Assembly: GCA_030704615.1 (NCBI GenBank)
Contig: CM060731.1
Location: 21,886,001 to 21,950,000 of the forward strand
Reading direction: 5' to 3'
Source of the DNA: Takakia lepidozioides
Taxonomy: Eukaryota > Plantae > Bryophyta
DNA length: 64,000 bases
A program made the translations under genes and the position numbers. This document shows positions 156 through 13,830 of the stretch, piece after piece. The stretch's first letter is position 1; the number at the start of each line of letters is the position of its first letter. The notes beneath the pieces were generated by a model. That model searched no databases, was not told the origin of the DNA, and was given only the letters and a program-made list of their open reading frames with translations.

Positions 156-3100
156 TACCTTCCGTCTCACCTGGGAATCCATATGTTGGTAAGTTGTTTT
201 TTCTCAGGACCTTGTTGGTGTATTGTTCTGTTTTGTTGAAATATGTGGTTCAACCTTCTTTTTGCAATGTTTTGTGTTAAAATCGTGAGGCAGATGAACT
301 GTGCTCAAGTCCAAGTTGTACACGAGCAATGTAGTCTCTAATCTATTTCTGTTCGTTGACTGGGACGCTCCTCTCAAAATTGATCCATTGAGAGTGGCCT
401 CTTCTGTTTTTTAGTTTATGTCAGATTGGGACAGTAATGTGATCTCCTCTCACAGAGGTGTAGAGTCACAGAGGTGTAGAGGGAAAACGTCTGCTAAAGT
501 CTTGTTATTGTGGACCTATATGAGTAAATTATTGACTTGATCGCTTGTATACTGCAGTATCTTCCGTTTCACCTGGAAATCCATCCGTTTCGCCTGCAGT
601 ATCTTCCGTTCCTGTTGGTAAGTTGTTTTTACTCAGGACCTTGTTGGTGTATTGGTCTTTTTTGTTCAAATATGTGGATTCAACTTTCGTTGTGCAATGT
701 TTTGTGTTAAAATGTTAAAACTATGAGGCAGATGAACTGTGCTCCGAGTCCAAGTTGCACTCGACCAATGTAGTCCCTGATCTAATTTGTTTGTTGACTC
801 GGACGCTTTTCTCAATGTTGATCCATTAAGAGTGGCCTCTTCTGTATTGTAGTTTACGTCTGATTGGGCCAGCAATGTAGCCCCTGATCTATTTCTGTTC
901 GTTGACTGGGACTCATCTCTCAAAATTGATACATTAAGATTGGCCTATTCATTATTGTAGCTTATATCAGATTGGGACAATGTGATCCCTTCTCGCAGAG
1001 GTGCAGGGAAAATGTCCCTCGAAGCCTTATTATTGTGGACCGAGTGAATTATTGACTTGATCGTTTGTATGTTGCAGGGCCATCTGCTGCACCTGGAAAT
1101 CCATATAAAGGTCACTGTCTCTGCCCCGGACCTTTTCAATCTATGCTTGTATCTTGGCCAAATTTGTGGCTTCAAGCATATTTCTGCTTCAATTGAATGA
1201 ATTTTATTTGTATGATGAGGCAGATGAATAGTTCGAGTTGTACCAGCGCAATGTACTATATGGAGATTAGGGTTTATTATTTTATTCCCGTGTGTTTTAA
1301 TTTGGAGGCCTCATCGAAATTACTCCATTGAGAGTGGCCTTTATTGTGCTCTTTGTCATGCCGTATTGGAGCATGGGTGTGATCTTTGTCCACAGAAGTG
1401 GAGAGGGAAAGCTTCTGGGGTATTTATCTTAGTGGTCCTGCGTCAGTAAATGATGGACTTTGATTGTTTGTATGTTACAGGGCCATCAGCCGCACCTGGA
1501 AATCCATATAAAGGTTGATATCTTTGCTCAGGAACTTTTCAATTGAAATCTCCAATTTGCACAAATATTTGGCTTGAAGTCTCGTCTTTAAATTATGGAT
1601 TGGTTTAGAGGGGTTTTGTCATCGTGTACCTGTGTGAGTTCAATATGGACCTGATCGGTCGTATGTCACAGGCCCATCAGTTGCACCAGGAAACCCGTAT
1701 AAAGGTCAACTTTTATCCCAGGATATTTTCACTTTAAAGTCTTATTCACCCAAACATGTGGTTTCAAGCATTTTGTAAATTCTTGAGTGAAAACTTCTAG
1801 GGTCTTCATCGTTGTGTACCTGTGTGAGTAAATTCTGGACTTGATTATTTGTCTGATACAGTGCCATCAGCTGCTCCAGGAAATCCATATAAAGGTCAAT
1901 AGTGCTTCTCATGAACTTTCCACTCCAAATATCCATCTTGCCCCAATATGCGAGTTGAAGCACTTTCTGTAAATGACTAGGGGGAGGCTCCATCTACCCT
2001 TAATGGTCATGTAGTTGGTGTCGTATTGGAATAGCAGTATGGCCTGCTTGCTCACAGATAGGCAAAAATTTCTTATCTTTGTGGGCCAGTAATTGATGGT
2101 CGGTGTGTTGCAGGGCCATCTGCTGCACCTGGAAATCCGTATGTTGGTCAGTATCTTTGCTCACGACCTTTTCAGTCTACGGTCGTAGTACTGAAATACG
2201 TGGGATCAAGCAGTTTTTGTCTTGATTGGAGTTGTCTGTTTGTTTGGTTGGTTGTTTGGTTTCCTAAATATGTGGTTCCCAGCGTTTTTTTAATCTTTGG
2301 TTTGAGGATAATGTCTGTTCTCAGTTCAAGCAATATGAGAGCAATCTTGTCTAGGAAAGCTCCTTGTAATCAATTCTGTTACTTGTCGACTCGGAAGACT
2401 TTCTGAGTTGATGCATTTAGAGTGGTCTTTATTGTGCTCTAGTTTACATTGTACTCTAGCAACAAATGTGGTCTGTCAAGACAAGCTTATTGAAAAGACC
2501 TATCATGGTTGACCTTCGTGAGTAAACGATAAACTTGATGGTTTGTATGTTGCAGGGCCATCTGCTGCACCTGGAAATCCATATGTTGGTCAGTATCGTC
2601 ACTCAGTACCTGCTAGTGAATAGCTTTAATTTGCACAAACCTTTATTTTTACTTTTACTTCTACAGTTCTAATTTGCCCACATGGGTGTTCAAACAGTGT
2701 TTGTCATTATTGCAAGTGTGGAACAGCAACGTGGCCTCCTTTCTAACCAAGGTGTAGATGGAAAACTTTTGGGGATGACTTTTCATCGTGTAACTTAATG
2801 TGTAAGATTGATTGGTTTGTATACTGCAGGGCCATCGGCTGCTCCAGGAAATCCATATGTTGGTCAGTATCTGTGCTCAGGACCTTTCCAGATTACAGTT
2901 CTAATATGCCCAAACATGTCTGTTCAAAACAGTTTCTCTCTTTATTGAAACTGTTTGGTCTGCACATCATGAGACAGATAGAGTGTCTTTTCGTAGTACG
3001 AGAGCAATGTAGTCTGTGGAGAATGAAAGCTACTTGGGGTGGACAGAAATTTTTTGGGGATTACTTTTGATGGCATAACTCAATGTTGGTTGGTTTGTAT

Positions 3101-12100: not shown

Positions 12101-13830
12101 AAGTGATCCATTTATAGTGGCGTTTTTGTGCTCTAGTTTATGTCATGTTGGATCGGCAATGTGCCGTCCTTTCTCACACAGATGTAGGTGAAAAGCTTCT
12201 ACAAAAGAGTTCTCAGCTTGGGCTTTCATGAGTCATACAAAGTATTGATTGAGAATAGTTTGTATATTGCAGGGACGTCTGCACCTGGAAATCCATATGT
12301 TGGTCAGTATCTTTGCTCAGGACTAATTTGGTCAAATGTGGGAATTGATTGAAACTGTTTCAGTTTTAACCTCGGAGCTGATGGAGTTTGCACCTAGTTC
12401 AAGACAGTGTAGAGCAATCTAGTCTGTGGAGGGTAAAAGCTTCTCTTAAGTCTAGAATTTTGGATACAACTGATGGGGGTGAGGGATTGTATGTGGCAGG
12501 CCCAACCTCTGCATCTCGAAGTGGGACGTCTCAGTCTACACCACGTAAGTCTCTATGCCTCGTCTCATTTGAGTCGAAGGTTGTCTATGGTCCCGAAGTT
12601 AATTAATTTGTGTCCCAAGGTTTTTCCCCCATGTAAATAAAAGTAGGATCAGTTGTAAACTGATATCTCATTGAAGAGACTGTATTCACAGGGTTCCCCA
12701 ATGGGTCGTACATTATTTGAAGAGCAATTTGCTCATTTATTTGAAAATAAATGTTAAGAATGAGAACTTCATTGTCAGACCTACGGGGATCTCCATAGCT
12801 TAATCAGCTAGATATGCTAGTCTGTGTGTCCCAGGACTCTCCGGATCTGAAACCCAACCTGCTCGGTCATCTTGTAATTCCTTCATCCTGTCCTGTTTTG
12901 GTCCAATCTTTCGTTCTCACTTGAGTTGATTGTGTTTTGTCTAGCATTTACTTTTTCGTAAATCTTGTCATGGGTAACAACGAGGCCTCATGCAAGATCC
13001 TGTATTTCAAGTGGATTTTACTGTGCTTTAATTTCATTTTTTGTAGAAATGTGGTTTTTGGTAGATTGGAAGGACAATCTTGGACTTCGAACTGTCTGAA
13101 GGAATTGATGGAAGGAGGTTCTGTCTTGCAGGGAAATCCTCTGGCGGAATGGGAGCTGACGAGGTTTTCCGAGCCGCTGGTAAGTAACTTTGAACCACCT
13201 CATGTAGTCATGGGTATTTTATGCATATTTTGTTGGTGGCAGTATTTGAAAGTAAACGTTCTATCTAAACCTGCCCTTCAGAATCTGATGTTGCCAAATA
13301 TCATGGTATACATGATTATATTGGTGCAGATCTATTGGATAGCTAGTTTCTCTTTGTTTTGTTTTCTTTTGAAGATGGACGATGTAATTTCTTTAGATCA
13401 GTTGCCTGTAGACTGAAGTGCCCATTTTGTTTATCGATTGTAGCATCATGGATCGATGATGCTTATCGATTGTAGCATCATGTAGCATGTCCTGCTTGAT
13501 GTTAGTACTAATTTGCTGATGATATTATGGCTGTTGATGATGATGATCTCAGGTATCCTTGATCCAACAACAGAAATTCCGGCAGACGACGGGTCAGGAG
13601 AAGTCGACAAGAATGAACTTCGAGCATGGTTGTATACCTTGGATGAGTACTCAACCAACCCAGCTGCCACTACTTTGGATGATCCCCTCGCATCTGTCAA
13701 TATTAATATAAATCCTGATGATAAATCCTTCAACATGAGTGCTGAAAGCCAACGGAATCAAATGAATCAAATGAGAAACATGAGAAGCGGCCCCAGAAAC
13801 CCCAGAGGCCCCAGAAACAAGAGATTTTAA
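156..13830 (+). CDS. 5'-partial gene of tandem micro-exons encoding a G/S/A/P/N/Y-rich repeat protein with a C-terminal EF-hand-like segment
   Basis: AG|exon|GT, phase 1-1 exons at 156-188, 558-617, 1078-1110, 1481-1513, 1672-1704, 1862-1894, 2114-2146, 2556-2588, 2830-2862, 3108-3143, then 25 exons every 206-207 bp from 3317-3349 to 8263-8295, then 11468-11500, 11671-11703, 11875-11907, 12273-12302, 12500-12544, 13132-13179 and terminal exon 13553-13830 (TAA). All splice in one open frame. A further exon at 12835-12873 is possible but weak. Confidence 0.85.
3100..12010 (+). repeat. 206-bp tandem array (33-nt exon + 173-nt intron), about 29 units, interrupted by a LINE
   Basis: Motif ttcagggacatcagctccagccggaaatccatatgttggtcagt recurs with period 206/207. 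Older, more divergent units of 190-520 bp lie at 1-3100. Confidence 0.97.
8401..11383 (-). mobile_element. Non-LTR retrotransposon (family A, RTE-X-like by inference) with both ends, APE endonuclease and C-terminal Zn finger, but RT deleted
   Basis: ORF 9723-10757 has APE motifs (GQETW, LLGDFNARVG); 3' Zn finger [18 protein letters not shown]; family 3' end ggccacaaggctacggcaaacaatgtcttacgagta; 16-bp TSD tgttttgttgtagatg at 8385-8400 and 11384-11399. Confidence 0.92.

What the first reader, a model, noticed from the sequence alone, without database searches (positions are those of the whole stretch)
156..13830. Apparent satellite DNA is a protein-coding array of about 39 micro-exons
Seen: each 206-bp unit has a U-rich tract, CAG, a 33-nt segment (GG ACA TCA GCT CCA GCC GGA AAT CCA TAT GTT G) and GTCAGT/GTGAGT. 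Every exon length (30, 33, 36, 45, 48, 60) is a multiple of 3 and phase 1-1, so they join into about 440 aa of (GTSAPAGNPYV)n/(GPSAAPGNPYK)n followed by unique terminal exons. Inference: the protein grows by tandem amplification of whole exon-intron units, and any exon can be skipped without a frameshift, giving a length-tunable repeat protein. Repeat maskers and ORF callers would miss it.
Basis: partly seen in the sequence, partly recalled or inferred. Interest (0 to 1): 0.9.

Follow-up and report, generated by a model that had tools for sequence, protein, structure and literature searches.

The report
Moss repeat-protein gene of tandem micro-exons
What looks like a 206-base satellite in a moss genome is almost certainly the middle and end of a split gene in which each repeat unit holds one 33-base exon for an 11-residue peptide; this gene design is known from animal elastic and matrix proteins, and I could not test whether the gene is expressed.

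Summary
Window 156-12302 holds 39 micro-exons (36 of 33 nt, one each of 30, 36 and 60 nt). Three unique exons follow (45, 48 and 278 nt), ending at a stop codon at 13828-13830. All 42 acceptors are AG and all 41 donors are GT. Every internal exon is a multiple of 3 and in phase 1-1.

The coding reading rests on sequence evidence:
- Among seven diverged GPSAAPGNPY(K/V) exons, 8 of 12 variable sites are third codon positions (P=0.004).
- pN/pS is 0.21. The other two frames give scrambled peptides or stops.
- Exons are 84% identical, while their homologous introns are 44-48% identical and 157-460 nt long.
- Exon length changes are all multiples of 3.
- Retaining any intron gives an in-frame stop.

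Growth by duplication of whole units is shown directly: a six-unit, 1,237-bp block is duplicated with 7 differences. A LINE with a 16-bp target-site duplication sits in one intron.

Not shown: transcription, splicing, exon skipping or function. The C-terminal exon has no relatives, and the 5' end lies outside the window. The design matches known tandem symmetric-exon genes (elastin, collagen, titin PEVK), so this is a new member of a known kind. Earlier scan notes report other exon-intron arrays in this same genome.

The parts
156..12302 (+). Array of 39 phase 1-1 micro-exons: 36 of 33 nt, plus 60 nt at 558-617, 36 nt at 3108-3143 and 30 nt at 12273-12302. Each is one peptide unit: VPSVSPGNPYV at 156; GPSAAPGNPYK four times at 1078-1894; GPSAAPGNPYV three times at 2114-2862; GTSAPAGNPYV 28 times at 3317-11907.
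3085..8398 (+). Young, homogenised core of the array: 206-bp exon-intron units (33-nt exon plus 173-nt intron), 25.8 copies, 93% matches.
3729..6202 (+). Six-unit (1,237-bp) block 3729-4965 duplicated in tandem at 4966-6202. The six unit pairs differ by 1, 0, 3, 0, 1 and 2 bases. This is direct evidence of growth by multi-unit duplication (unequal exchange).
8385..11399 (-). LINE fragment inserted in one intron, flanked by a perfect 16-bp target-site duplication (8385-8400 and 11384-11399). Removing it restores a 173-nt intron exactly. ORF 9723-10757 (-) has weak endonuclease/exonuclease/phosphatase matches.
11468..11907 (+). Three further GTSAPAGNPYV units 3' of the LINE (period about 203 bp). 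They differ from the core units at 11-25 positions. The first ends in T instead of G, so its split codon would read Trp instead of Gly.
12500..12544 (+). Unique 45-nt exon, phase 1-1, peptide PTSASRSGTSQSTP, donor GTAAGT.
13132..13179 (+). Unique 48-nt exon, phase 1-1, peptide KSSGGMGADEVFRAA, donor GTAAGT.
13553..13830 (+). Terminal coding exon: 91 complete codons plus the stop TAA at 13828-13830. It has an acidic middle and a basic Arg/Asn/Pro tail. No Pfam family and no relative among 1.84 billion representatives. It is predicted to be mostly disordered with two short helices.

Best explanation
This is the central and 3' part of a nuclear protein-coding gene of a moss; earlier scan notes say probably Takakia. 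The repetitive protein is encoded one peptide unit per exon. Each unit is a 33-nt exon flanked by a T-rich intron of about 173 nt that carries GT, a TTGAT branch-like box, a pyrimidine tract and CAG. Because every exon is 3n long and splits a Gly codon in the same way (G|GN), the exons should splice into a continuous (GPSAAPGNPYK/V)n-(GTSAPAGNPYV)n chain. In the window that chain is 438 residues. It is followed by 31 unique residues and a 92-residue C-terminal tail.

The array lengthens by unequal exchange that duplicates one to six whole units at a time. Selection keeps the peptide and the splice signals while the introns drift.

Shown: the anatomy, the coding constraint and the duplication history.

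Inferred: that the exons are spliced together, probably constitutively and in order by intron definition, and that the product is an intrinsically disordered Pro/Ala/Ser/Thr/Gly/Tyr-rich polymer. My best guess for its role is a structural, hydroxyproline-glycoprotein-like matrix or cell-wall protein. An intracellular low-complexity scaffold is nearly as likely, because the N-terminus was not seen.
For: 1. All 42 exons have an AG acceptor and all 41 donors are GT. All internal exons are 3n and phase 1-1, and the frame runs on into unique exons and a stop codon.
2. The constraint is frame-specific. Among seven distinct GPSAAPGNPY(K/V) exons, 8 of 12 variable sites are third positions in the proposed frame (hypergeometric P=0.0036). 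Codon differences are 58 synonymous against 18 non-synonymous there, against 5/94 and 2/77 in the other frames, one of which has stops. pS is 0.37 and pN 0.079, or 0.013 without the K/V codon.
3. In the young core, 4 of 5 variable exon sites are synonymous third positions. Exon diversity is 0.021 against 0.0675 for introns.
4. The old units have 84% identical exons, but intron flanks are 44-48% identical and introns are 157-460 nt long. The best-kept intron blocks are the splice signals.
5. Exon length variants (30, 36, 60 nt) are all 3n, while intron lengths fall in all three classes mod 3.
6. Exons have 52.5% GC. Introns have 39% GC and 40% T, the usual contrast in plants. 39 of 42 exons have a YTNAY box 11-60 nt upstream of their acceptor.
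7. Donors show compensation. Exons ending AAG tolerate weak +3 to +6 positions, whereas all exons ending TTG, TCG or TTT keep AGT at +4 to +6.
8. Read-through is impossible. No ORF across the array exceeds 90 aa, and every intron gives an in-frame stop if retained.
9. A six-unit block is duplicated at 99.4% identity.
10. A LINE insertion with a target-site duplication lies inside an intron and leaves the neighbouring exons intact.
Against: No homologue of the C-terminal exon exists in 1.84 billion representative proteins, in Pfam or in the ESM Atlas by features. A degenerate one-exon pattern found only 20 single matches in metagenome contigs and no array; by my rough estimate chance alone gives tens of such matches. 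Conservation across species is therefore unshown. The 5' end (promoter, start codon, targeting signal) lies outside the window. One unit has a disfavoured -3 G at its acceptor (6409), and one has a Gly-to-Trp change at its split codon (11500). The 28 core units are young copies, so their intact splice sites are not 28 independent observations.
Confidence: 0.75

Rival explanations
1. The gene is real but the array is used as a set of cassettes. Many units are skipped, or internal in-frame AGs are used, so the gene yields a population of length variants. It adds to the best explanation rather than excluding it.
For: Every internal exon is phase 1-1 and 3n, so any subset splices in frame. Near-identical donors and acceptors are repeated every 206 bp. 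Each core exon holds two internal AGs, at +9 and +15, that would also keep the frame. The four K-type exons have weak donors, GTCACT, GTTGAT, GTCAAC and GTCAAT.
Against: Nothing shows skipping. Short 173-nt introns with strong local signals favour ordered intron-definition splicing. Selection on every old unit's peptide implies that those units are regularly included.
Confidence: 0.25
2. It is a recently dead gene or an expanding relic. The array coded for protein in the past, which explains the constraint in the old units. The young 206-bp core would now be neutral satellite amplification of an exon-intron unit that is no longer expressed.
For: There is no expression evidence and no homologues. 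A 3-kb LINE lies inside the array. One acceptor has G at -3 and one unit carries a Gly-to-Trp change. With only 5 variable exon sites in the core, the synonymous bias there is weak (P=0.03).
Against: There is not one frameshift, stop, lost GT or lost AG in 42 exons spread over 13.7 kb, although the core introns vary at over half of their columns. The unique 3' exons are intact and in phase through to the stop. The LINE lies cleanly inside an intron.
Confidence: 0.1
3. It is non-coding satellite DNA whose exon-like features are coincidental.
For: It has a tandem 206-bp period with higher-order structure and homogenisation. All three frames of the core 33-mer are open (and direct reading).
Against: The synonymous variation is frame-specific. 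Exons are 84% identical against 44-48% for introns. Exon indels are all 3n. Splice signals are conserved in units whose introns have otherwise diverged. The phase continues into unique exons that end at a stop.
Confidence: 0.03

Closest known systems
Elastin gene (ELN) of vertebrates. From my own knowledge, not tested here.
   Same: It has many short exons that are all multiples of 3. All exon borders split a codon the same way (phase 1-1, usually a Gly codon), so exons behave as in-frame cassettes. The product is a Gly/Pro/Ala/Val-rich disordered polymer.
   Different: Elastin alternates two exon types (hydrophobic and cross-linking), its introns are long and unrelated, and it is not a homogenised satellite-like array. 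It is an animal protein with no sequence relationship.
Titin PEVK exons and fibrillar-collagen 54-bp or 45-bp exons. The general rule that disordered proteins are assembled from symmetric exons that often arise by internal tandem duplication is stated in PMC3632108.
   Same: The repeat unit is one short symmetric exon, the gene expands by tandem exon duplication, and the product is a disordered or extended structural protein. In titin, differential exon inclusion tunes spring length.
   Different: Those genes have larger exons (about 75-90 nt or 54 nt), long heterogeneous introns and old duplications. Here the units are 206 bp, up to 100% identical and evidently still duplicating. Alternative inclusion is not shown here.
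Spider flagelliform silk gene (Flag). From my own knowledge; spider silk gene architecture is also discussed in PMC1885213 (listed, not read).
   Same: It has iterated exon-intron units that are homogenised as whole units, so introns are repeated along with exons.
   Different: Flag exons are hundreds of codons long and number about a dozen. Here the exons are 11 codons long and number at least 39 in the window.
Schistosome micro-exon genes (MEGs). From my own knowledge.
   Same: They have runs of symmetric micro-exons of 36 nt or less between longer terminal exons, and skipping any of them keeps the frame.
   Different: MEG micro-exons are mostly unrelated to each other, the proteins are small secreted antigens, and their variation by skipping is documented. 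Here the exons are copies of one unit and skipping is untested.
Plant hydroxyproline-rich glycoproteins (arabinogalactan-protein-like and proline-rich proteins with PVYK-type repeats). From my own knowledge.
   Same: Each unit is 6/11 Pro+Ala+Ser+Thr, has a non-contiguous Ala-Pro (and Ser-Pro in the first two exons), and carries a regularly spaced Tyr (with Lys in four units), as in cross-linkable wall proteins.
   Different: No signal peptide was seen because the 5' end is outside the window. There is no C-terminal GPI-type hydrophobic tail. There is no sequence homology, and known HRGP repeats usually lie in one large exon.
Other exon-intron unit arrays noted by this scan in the same genome (s1-472832, s1-469650, s1-473471, s1-460530). 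These are AI notes that I did not check.
   Same: They are tandemly duplicated small symmetric exons with their introns. Two are reported as real exons in secreted LRR proteins, and one is reported as spliced at the predicted sites.
   Different: They lie in different genes, have other unit sizes (51 and 99 nt) and fewer copies. This array is the longest and most satellite-like of those listed.

Membership tests
Repeat-protein genes built from tandemly duplicated symmetric exons (elastin / collagen / titin-PEVK type) | All repeat exons are multiples of 3 and share one phase class | tested here: met
   41 of 41 internal exons are 3n and phase 1-1.
Repeat-protein genes built from tandemly duplicated symmetric exons (elastin / collagen / titin-PEVK type) | Successive exons are homologous and each encodes one peptide repeat | tested here: met
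   There are 39 exons of the xxSxxPGNPY(V/K) type. The old exons are 84% identical to each other.
Repeat-protein genes built from tandemly duplicated symmetric exons (elastin / collagen / titin-PEVK type) | The exons are spliced into one mRNA and translated | not testable with these tools
Only indirect support is available: purifying selection on the peptide, pN/pS 0.21.
Repeat-protein genes built from tandemly duplicated symmetric exons (elastin / collagen / titin-PEVK type) | Differential exon inclusion tunes the length (titin and elastin only) | not testable with these tools
   No reads were available.
Micro-exon genes (schistosome MEG type) | Most of the coding sequence lies in symmetric exons of 36 nt or less, between longer terminal exons | tested here: inconclusive
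   The micro-exons and a longer 3' exon are present. The 5' exon lies outside the window.
Micro-exon genes (schistosome MEG type) | The product is small and secreted, and its variants arise by exon skipping | not tested
   The product would exceed 560 residues in the window alone. Secretion and skipping are unknown.
Plant hydroxyproline-rich glycoproteins (AGP/PRP-like) | Pro+Ala+Ser+Thr make up at least about 50% of residues, with non-contiguous Ala/Ser/Thr-Pro glycomodules | tested here: met
   Counted by hand from the per-exon peptides: 6 of 11 residues in both main unit types, with one Ala-Pro per unit.
Plant hydroxyproline-rich glycoproteins (AGP/PRP-like) | N-terminal signal peptide | not testable with these tools
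   The 5' end is outside the window. An unchecked note (s1-474573) calls the upstream exon 'transit-peptide-like'.
Plant hydroxyproline-rich glycoproteins (AGP/PRP-like) | C-terminal GPI-anchor signal (classical AGPs only) | tested here: not met
   The C-terminus is hydrophilic and basic and ends in ...RNKRF.
Non-coding satellite DNA | Tandem homogenised units with higher-order structure | tested here: met
Non-coding satellite DNA | No coding constraint within the unit | tested here: not met
   Synonymous bias is frame-specific and exons are better conserved than introns.

The most novel reading that the evidence does not exclude
The array is a live 'protein-length dial'. Exon-intron units are gained and lost so fast by unequal exchange that individuals or populations carry different unit numbers, and cassette skipping or the in-frame internal acceptors add isoform length variation. 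This would give the moss a heritable and a splicing-level way to tune a structural or condensate-forming polymer. Together with the other arrays noted in this genome, it would mean that amplification of exon-intron units is a general way this lineage makes new repeat proteins.
Probability: 0.2. Interest if true: 0.7.

Novelty: new member of a known kind. Interest (0 to 1): 0.45.

Why it matters
A stretch that repeat maskers would discard as satellite is very probably several hundred codons of a gene, so annotations of this genome and of similar plant genomes may be missing a class of repeat proteins. The array is young enough that its growth can be read directly: a six-unit block is duplicated at 99.4% identity. 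That makes it a clear plant example of how tandem exon-intron duplication builds disordered repeat proteins, a process known mainly from animal genes such as elastin, collagen and titin. If splicing or copy number proves variable, the array would be a tractable system for studying how the length of a plant structural or low-complexity protein is tuned. The protein itself has no known relatives.

Tried and rejected
I tried one neighbouring, non-overlapping stretch, 12100-13500.
2. Relatives of the C-terminal exon. None in Pfam, none in 1.84 billion representative proteins, and no usable hit in the ESM Atlas by features.
3. Control for whether the protein collection holds this species. The kinase ORF 61046-62023 finds plant kinases at 65% identity at best. 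The species therefore seems to be absent, or hidden by the length filter, and the blank says nothing about annotation or expression.
4. Cross-species search with a degenerate one-exon-plus-donor pattern in metagenome contigs. It gave 20 loci with a single match each and no arrays. By my rough estimate chance alone gives tens of such matches. I did not open any of them; L016 comes from a human-gut metagenome and was left alone.
5. Single-sequence AlphaFold of the C-terminal exon. Mean pLDDT 63.8 and pTM 0.21, two short helices and no fold worth searching.
6. Rfam. Only a tRNA, elsewhere in the window.
7. Literature. The plant micro-exon papers (PMC8831610, PMC11096116) deal with conserved exons of 15 nt or less, not tandem arrays. 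I found no paper describing this gene or peptide.
8. Joined model. Exons were translated one by one. In one search the exon letters were pooled only to count base composition. Because single exons are 10-19 residues long, the repeat peptide could not be searched against protein databases at all.
9. My first acceptor heuristic picked AGs inside the exons. One search corrected this.
10. A free-end-gap pairwise aligner gave erratic intron identities. I replaced it with MAFFT alignments.
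Full report
**Observation**

Tandem Repeats Finder reports a 206-bp array at 3085-8398 (25.8 copies, 93% matches) and a 203-bp array at 11384-12011. I anchored on the conserved GGAAATCC core and then on the donor and the pyrimidine tract. This gave 39 exon-like segments between 156 and 12302: 36 of 33 nt and one each of 60, 36 and 30 nt.

Three unique exons follow: 12500-12544 (45 nt), 13132-13179 (48 nt) and 13553-13830 (278 nt, ending in TAA). All are in the same phase, and their split codons read Gly, Arg and Gly.

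- All 42 acceptors are AG. 41 are CAG and one is GAG, at 6409.
- All 41 donors are GT. TTG|GTCAGT occurs 28 times, TCG|GTGAGT 4 times and GTAAGT 4 times.
- The window begins inside an intron, so the gene continues upstream.

The one correction is that the strict 206-bp period applies only to the core. Older units at 156-3108 have introns of 157-460 nt.

**Is it coding?**

The core 33-mer is open in all three frames, so open frames alone prove nothing. The diverged units decide the question.

- Seven distinct DNA versions of the GPSAAPGNPY(K/V) exon (1078-2862) vary at 12 sites, and 8 of these are third codon positions in the proposed phase-1 frame (hypergeometric P=0.0036).
- Codon differences are 58 synonymous against 18 non-synonymous in that frame. 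Nearly all the non-synonymous ones are the K/V class difference.
- The other two frames give 5/94 and 2/77, with seven different peptides or stop codons.
- By the Nei-Gojobori method, pS is 0.37 and pN is 0.079, or 0.013 with the K/V codon masked.
- The same units have exons 84% identical, but the first 105 nt and last 110 nt of their introns are only 48% and 44% identical.
- The intron columns that survive best are GT at the 5' end and a TTGAT...TTTGTAT...CAG block at the 3' end, that is, a branch-like box, a pyrimidine tract and the acceptor.
- Exon length variants (30, 36 and 60 nt) are all 3n, while intron lengths fall into all three residue classes.
- In the young core, 4 of 5 variable exon sites are synonymous third positions. 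Nucleotide diversity is 0.021 in the exon against 0.0675 in the intron. This is weaker evidence, because the units are recent copies.
- Exons have 52.5% GC. Introns have 39% GC and 40% T, the contrast that plant splicing relies on (the requirement itself is my own knowledge).
- Donors show the expected compensation. Exons ending in AAG tolerate poor +3 to +6 positions, while all exons ending TTG, TCG or TTT keep AGT at +4 to +6.
- Read-through translation is excluded. No ORF across the array exceeds 90 aa, and every one of the 41 introns gives an in-frame stop if retained.

**How it grows**

A unit-by-unit difference matrix shows that the six units at 3729-4965 recur at 4966-6202 with 1, 0, 3, 0, 1 and 2 differences: 7 in 1,237 bp. 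Neighbouring units differ by 5-20. Mean identity peaks at a lag of 6 units. Other units pair up at irregular distances. This is the signature of repeated unequal exchange involving blocks of one to several units.

A 2,983-bp LINE fragment lies in one intron. Its minus-strand ORF has weak endonuclease matches. It is flanked by a perfect 16-bp target-site duplication, and deleting it restores a 173-nt intron exactly. The three units 3' of the LINE have a period of about 203 bp and differ more from the core units, as expected if the insertion hinders homogenisation across it.

**The product**

Read exon by exon, the units are:
- VPSVSPGNPYV, once;
- a 20-residue Ser/Val/Pro variant, once;
- GPSAAPGNPYK, four times (one of them with Val for Ala);
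- GPSAAPGNPYV, three times;
- GPSAAPAGNPYV, once;
- GTSAPAGNPYV, 28 times;
- GTSAPGNPYV, once.

Each main unit is 6/11 Pro+Ala+Ser+Thr, with two Gly and one Tyr. Such a chain should be disordered.

The C-terminal exon (91 codons) has an acidic centre and a basic Arg/Asn/Pro tail. It matches no Pfam family and no protein among 1.84 billion representatives, and it has no Atlas look-alike. It folds only into two short helices at low confidence (pLDDT 63.8, pTM 0.21).

The composition resembles plant hydroxyproline-rich wall glycoproteins: Ala-Pro glycomodules and Tyr/Lys spacing as in PVYK-type proline-rich proteins (my own knowledge). There is no GPI-type tail, and the N-terminus lies outside the window. 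An unchecked scan note (s1-474573) describes a 'transit-peptide-like' exon with SGRxGYQ repeats just upstream of the array. If that exon belongs to this gene, it would point to an intracellular low-complexity protein instead. I therefore rank a structural matrix or wall polymer first and an intracellular scaffold a close second, both as inference.

**What could not be done**

I then stopped, and read laying was not used.
- Exons were handled singly by reference, and exon letters were pooled once only, to count base composition. Single exons are 10-19 residues long, so the repeat peptide itself could not be searched against protein databases.
- As a control, the kinase ORF 61046-62023 found only plant kinases at 65% identity or less. 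This confirms a land plant but shows that the collection seems not to hold this species. The blank for the C-terminal exon therefore says nothing about annotation or expression.
- A degenerate pattern for one exon plus its donor matched 4 times in the window against 0 expected. In metagenome contigs it gave only 20 single matches and no arrays, which by my rough estimate is about what chance would give. I opened none of these loci. One, L016, is from a human-gut metagenome and was left alone.

**Comparison with known systems**

The layout is the one known from elastin (all exons 3n, phase 1-1, Gly codons split at the borders), from collagen 54-bp exons and from titin PEVK exons (my own knowledge). 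[quoted passage not shown]

The spider Flag silk gene shares the homogenisation of whole exon-intron units. Schistosome micro-exon genes share the exon size and symmetry, but their exons are not related to one another. The plant micro-exon literature covers conserved exons of 15 nt or less, not arrays (PMC8831610, PMC11096116).

Earlier notes of this scan report several other exon-intron unit arrays in the same genome: two in LRR glycoprotein stalks, one in a hAT element reported as spliced at the predicted sites, and one beside MER3. I did not check them. They suggest that the mechanism recurs in this genome, and they make this case less singular. Another note (s1-473046) says this same array continues for at least 17 more exons upstream of the window.

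**Verdict**

- The coding, exon-per-repeat reading and growth by unit amplification are well supported by sequence evidence (confidence about 0.75 that this is a functional spliced gene).
- Length tuning by exon skipping is only a formal possibility (about 0.2-0.25).
- Function is unknown beyond a disordered repeat polymer.
- It is a new member of a known kind of gene architecture that encodes an orphan protein. Interest is moderate (0.45).

Noticed in passing
window 3317-8295, every core exon: Each 33-nt core exon has two internal AGs, ending at exon positions 9 and 15. Using either as an acceptor would leave 24 or 18 nt and keep the frame, so alternative 3' splice sites would delete 3 or 5 residues in frame (seen).
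   Followed up: no
window, introns of all units (for example 3350-3420, 1111-1180, 189-260): Besides the splice signals, two intron blocks survive even between old, diverged units: GGACCTT about 18-25 nt after the donor and ATGTGGnTTCAAG about 55-70 nt after it. In the core, intron columns 59-92 have almost no variation. These could be intronic splicing elements or simply slow decay.
   Followed up: partly
window 1078-1894 versus the rest of the array: The four Lys-type exons end in AAG and have weak donors (GTCACT, GTTGAT, GTCAAC, GTCAAT). All Val-type exons end in TTG, TCG or TTT and keep GTnAGT. This is the pattern expected from compensation in U1 pairing.
   Followed up: partly
window 450-481, 552-610 and 766-976: There are small internal duplications inside the oldest units: a 16-bp repeat and a 108-bp repeat in introns, and a 21-bp repeat of 2.8 copies that spans the 60-nt exon 558-617 and explains its extra 27 nt.
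   Followed up: no
window 28455-28526 (-): A tRNA gene, 55 bits against Rfam RF00005.
   Followed up: no
window 20120-21840 (+) and 55302-57856 (+): Two copies of a reverse-transcriptase-bearing retroelement share sequence, with identical 40-mers at 20382 and 56361.
   Followed up: no
window 39117-40154 (-): An ORF with a strong DUF7869 match (E=1e-40).
   Followed up: no
window 61046-62023 (+): The kinase-domain ORF finds land-plant kinases at 65% identity at best. Named hits include Sphagnum, ferns and angiosperms. The protein collection therefore seems to lack this species.
   Followed up: partly
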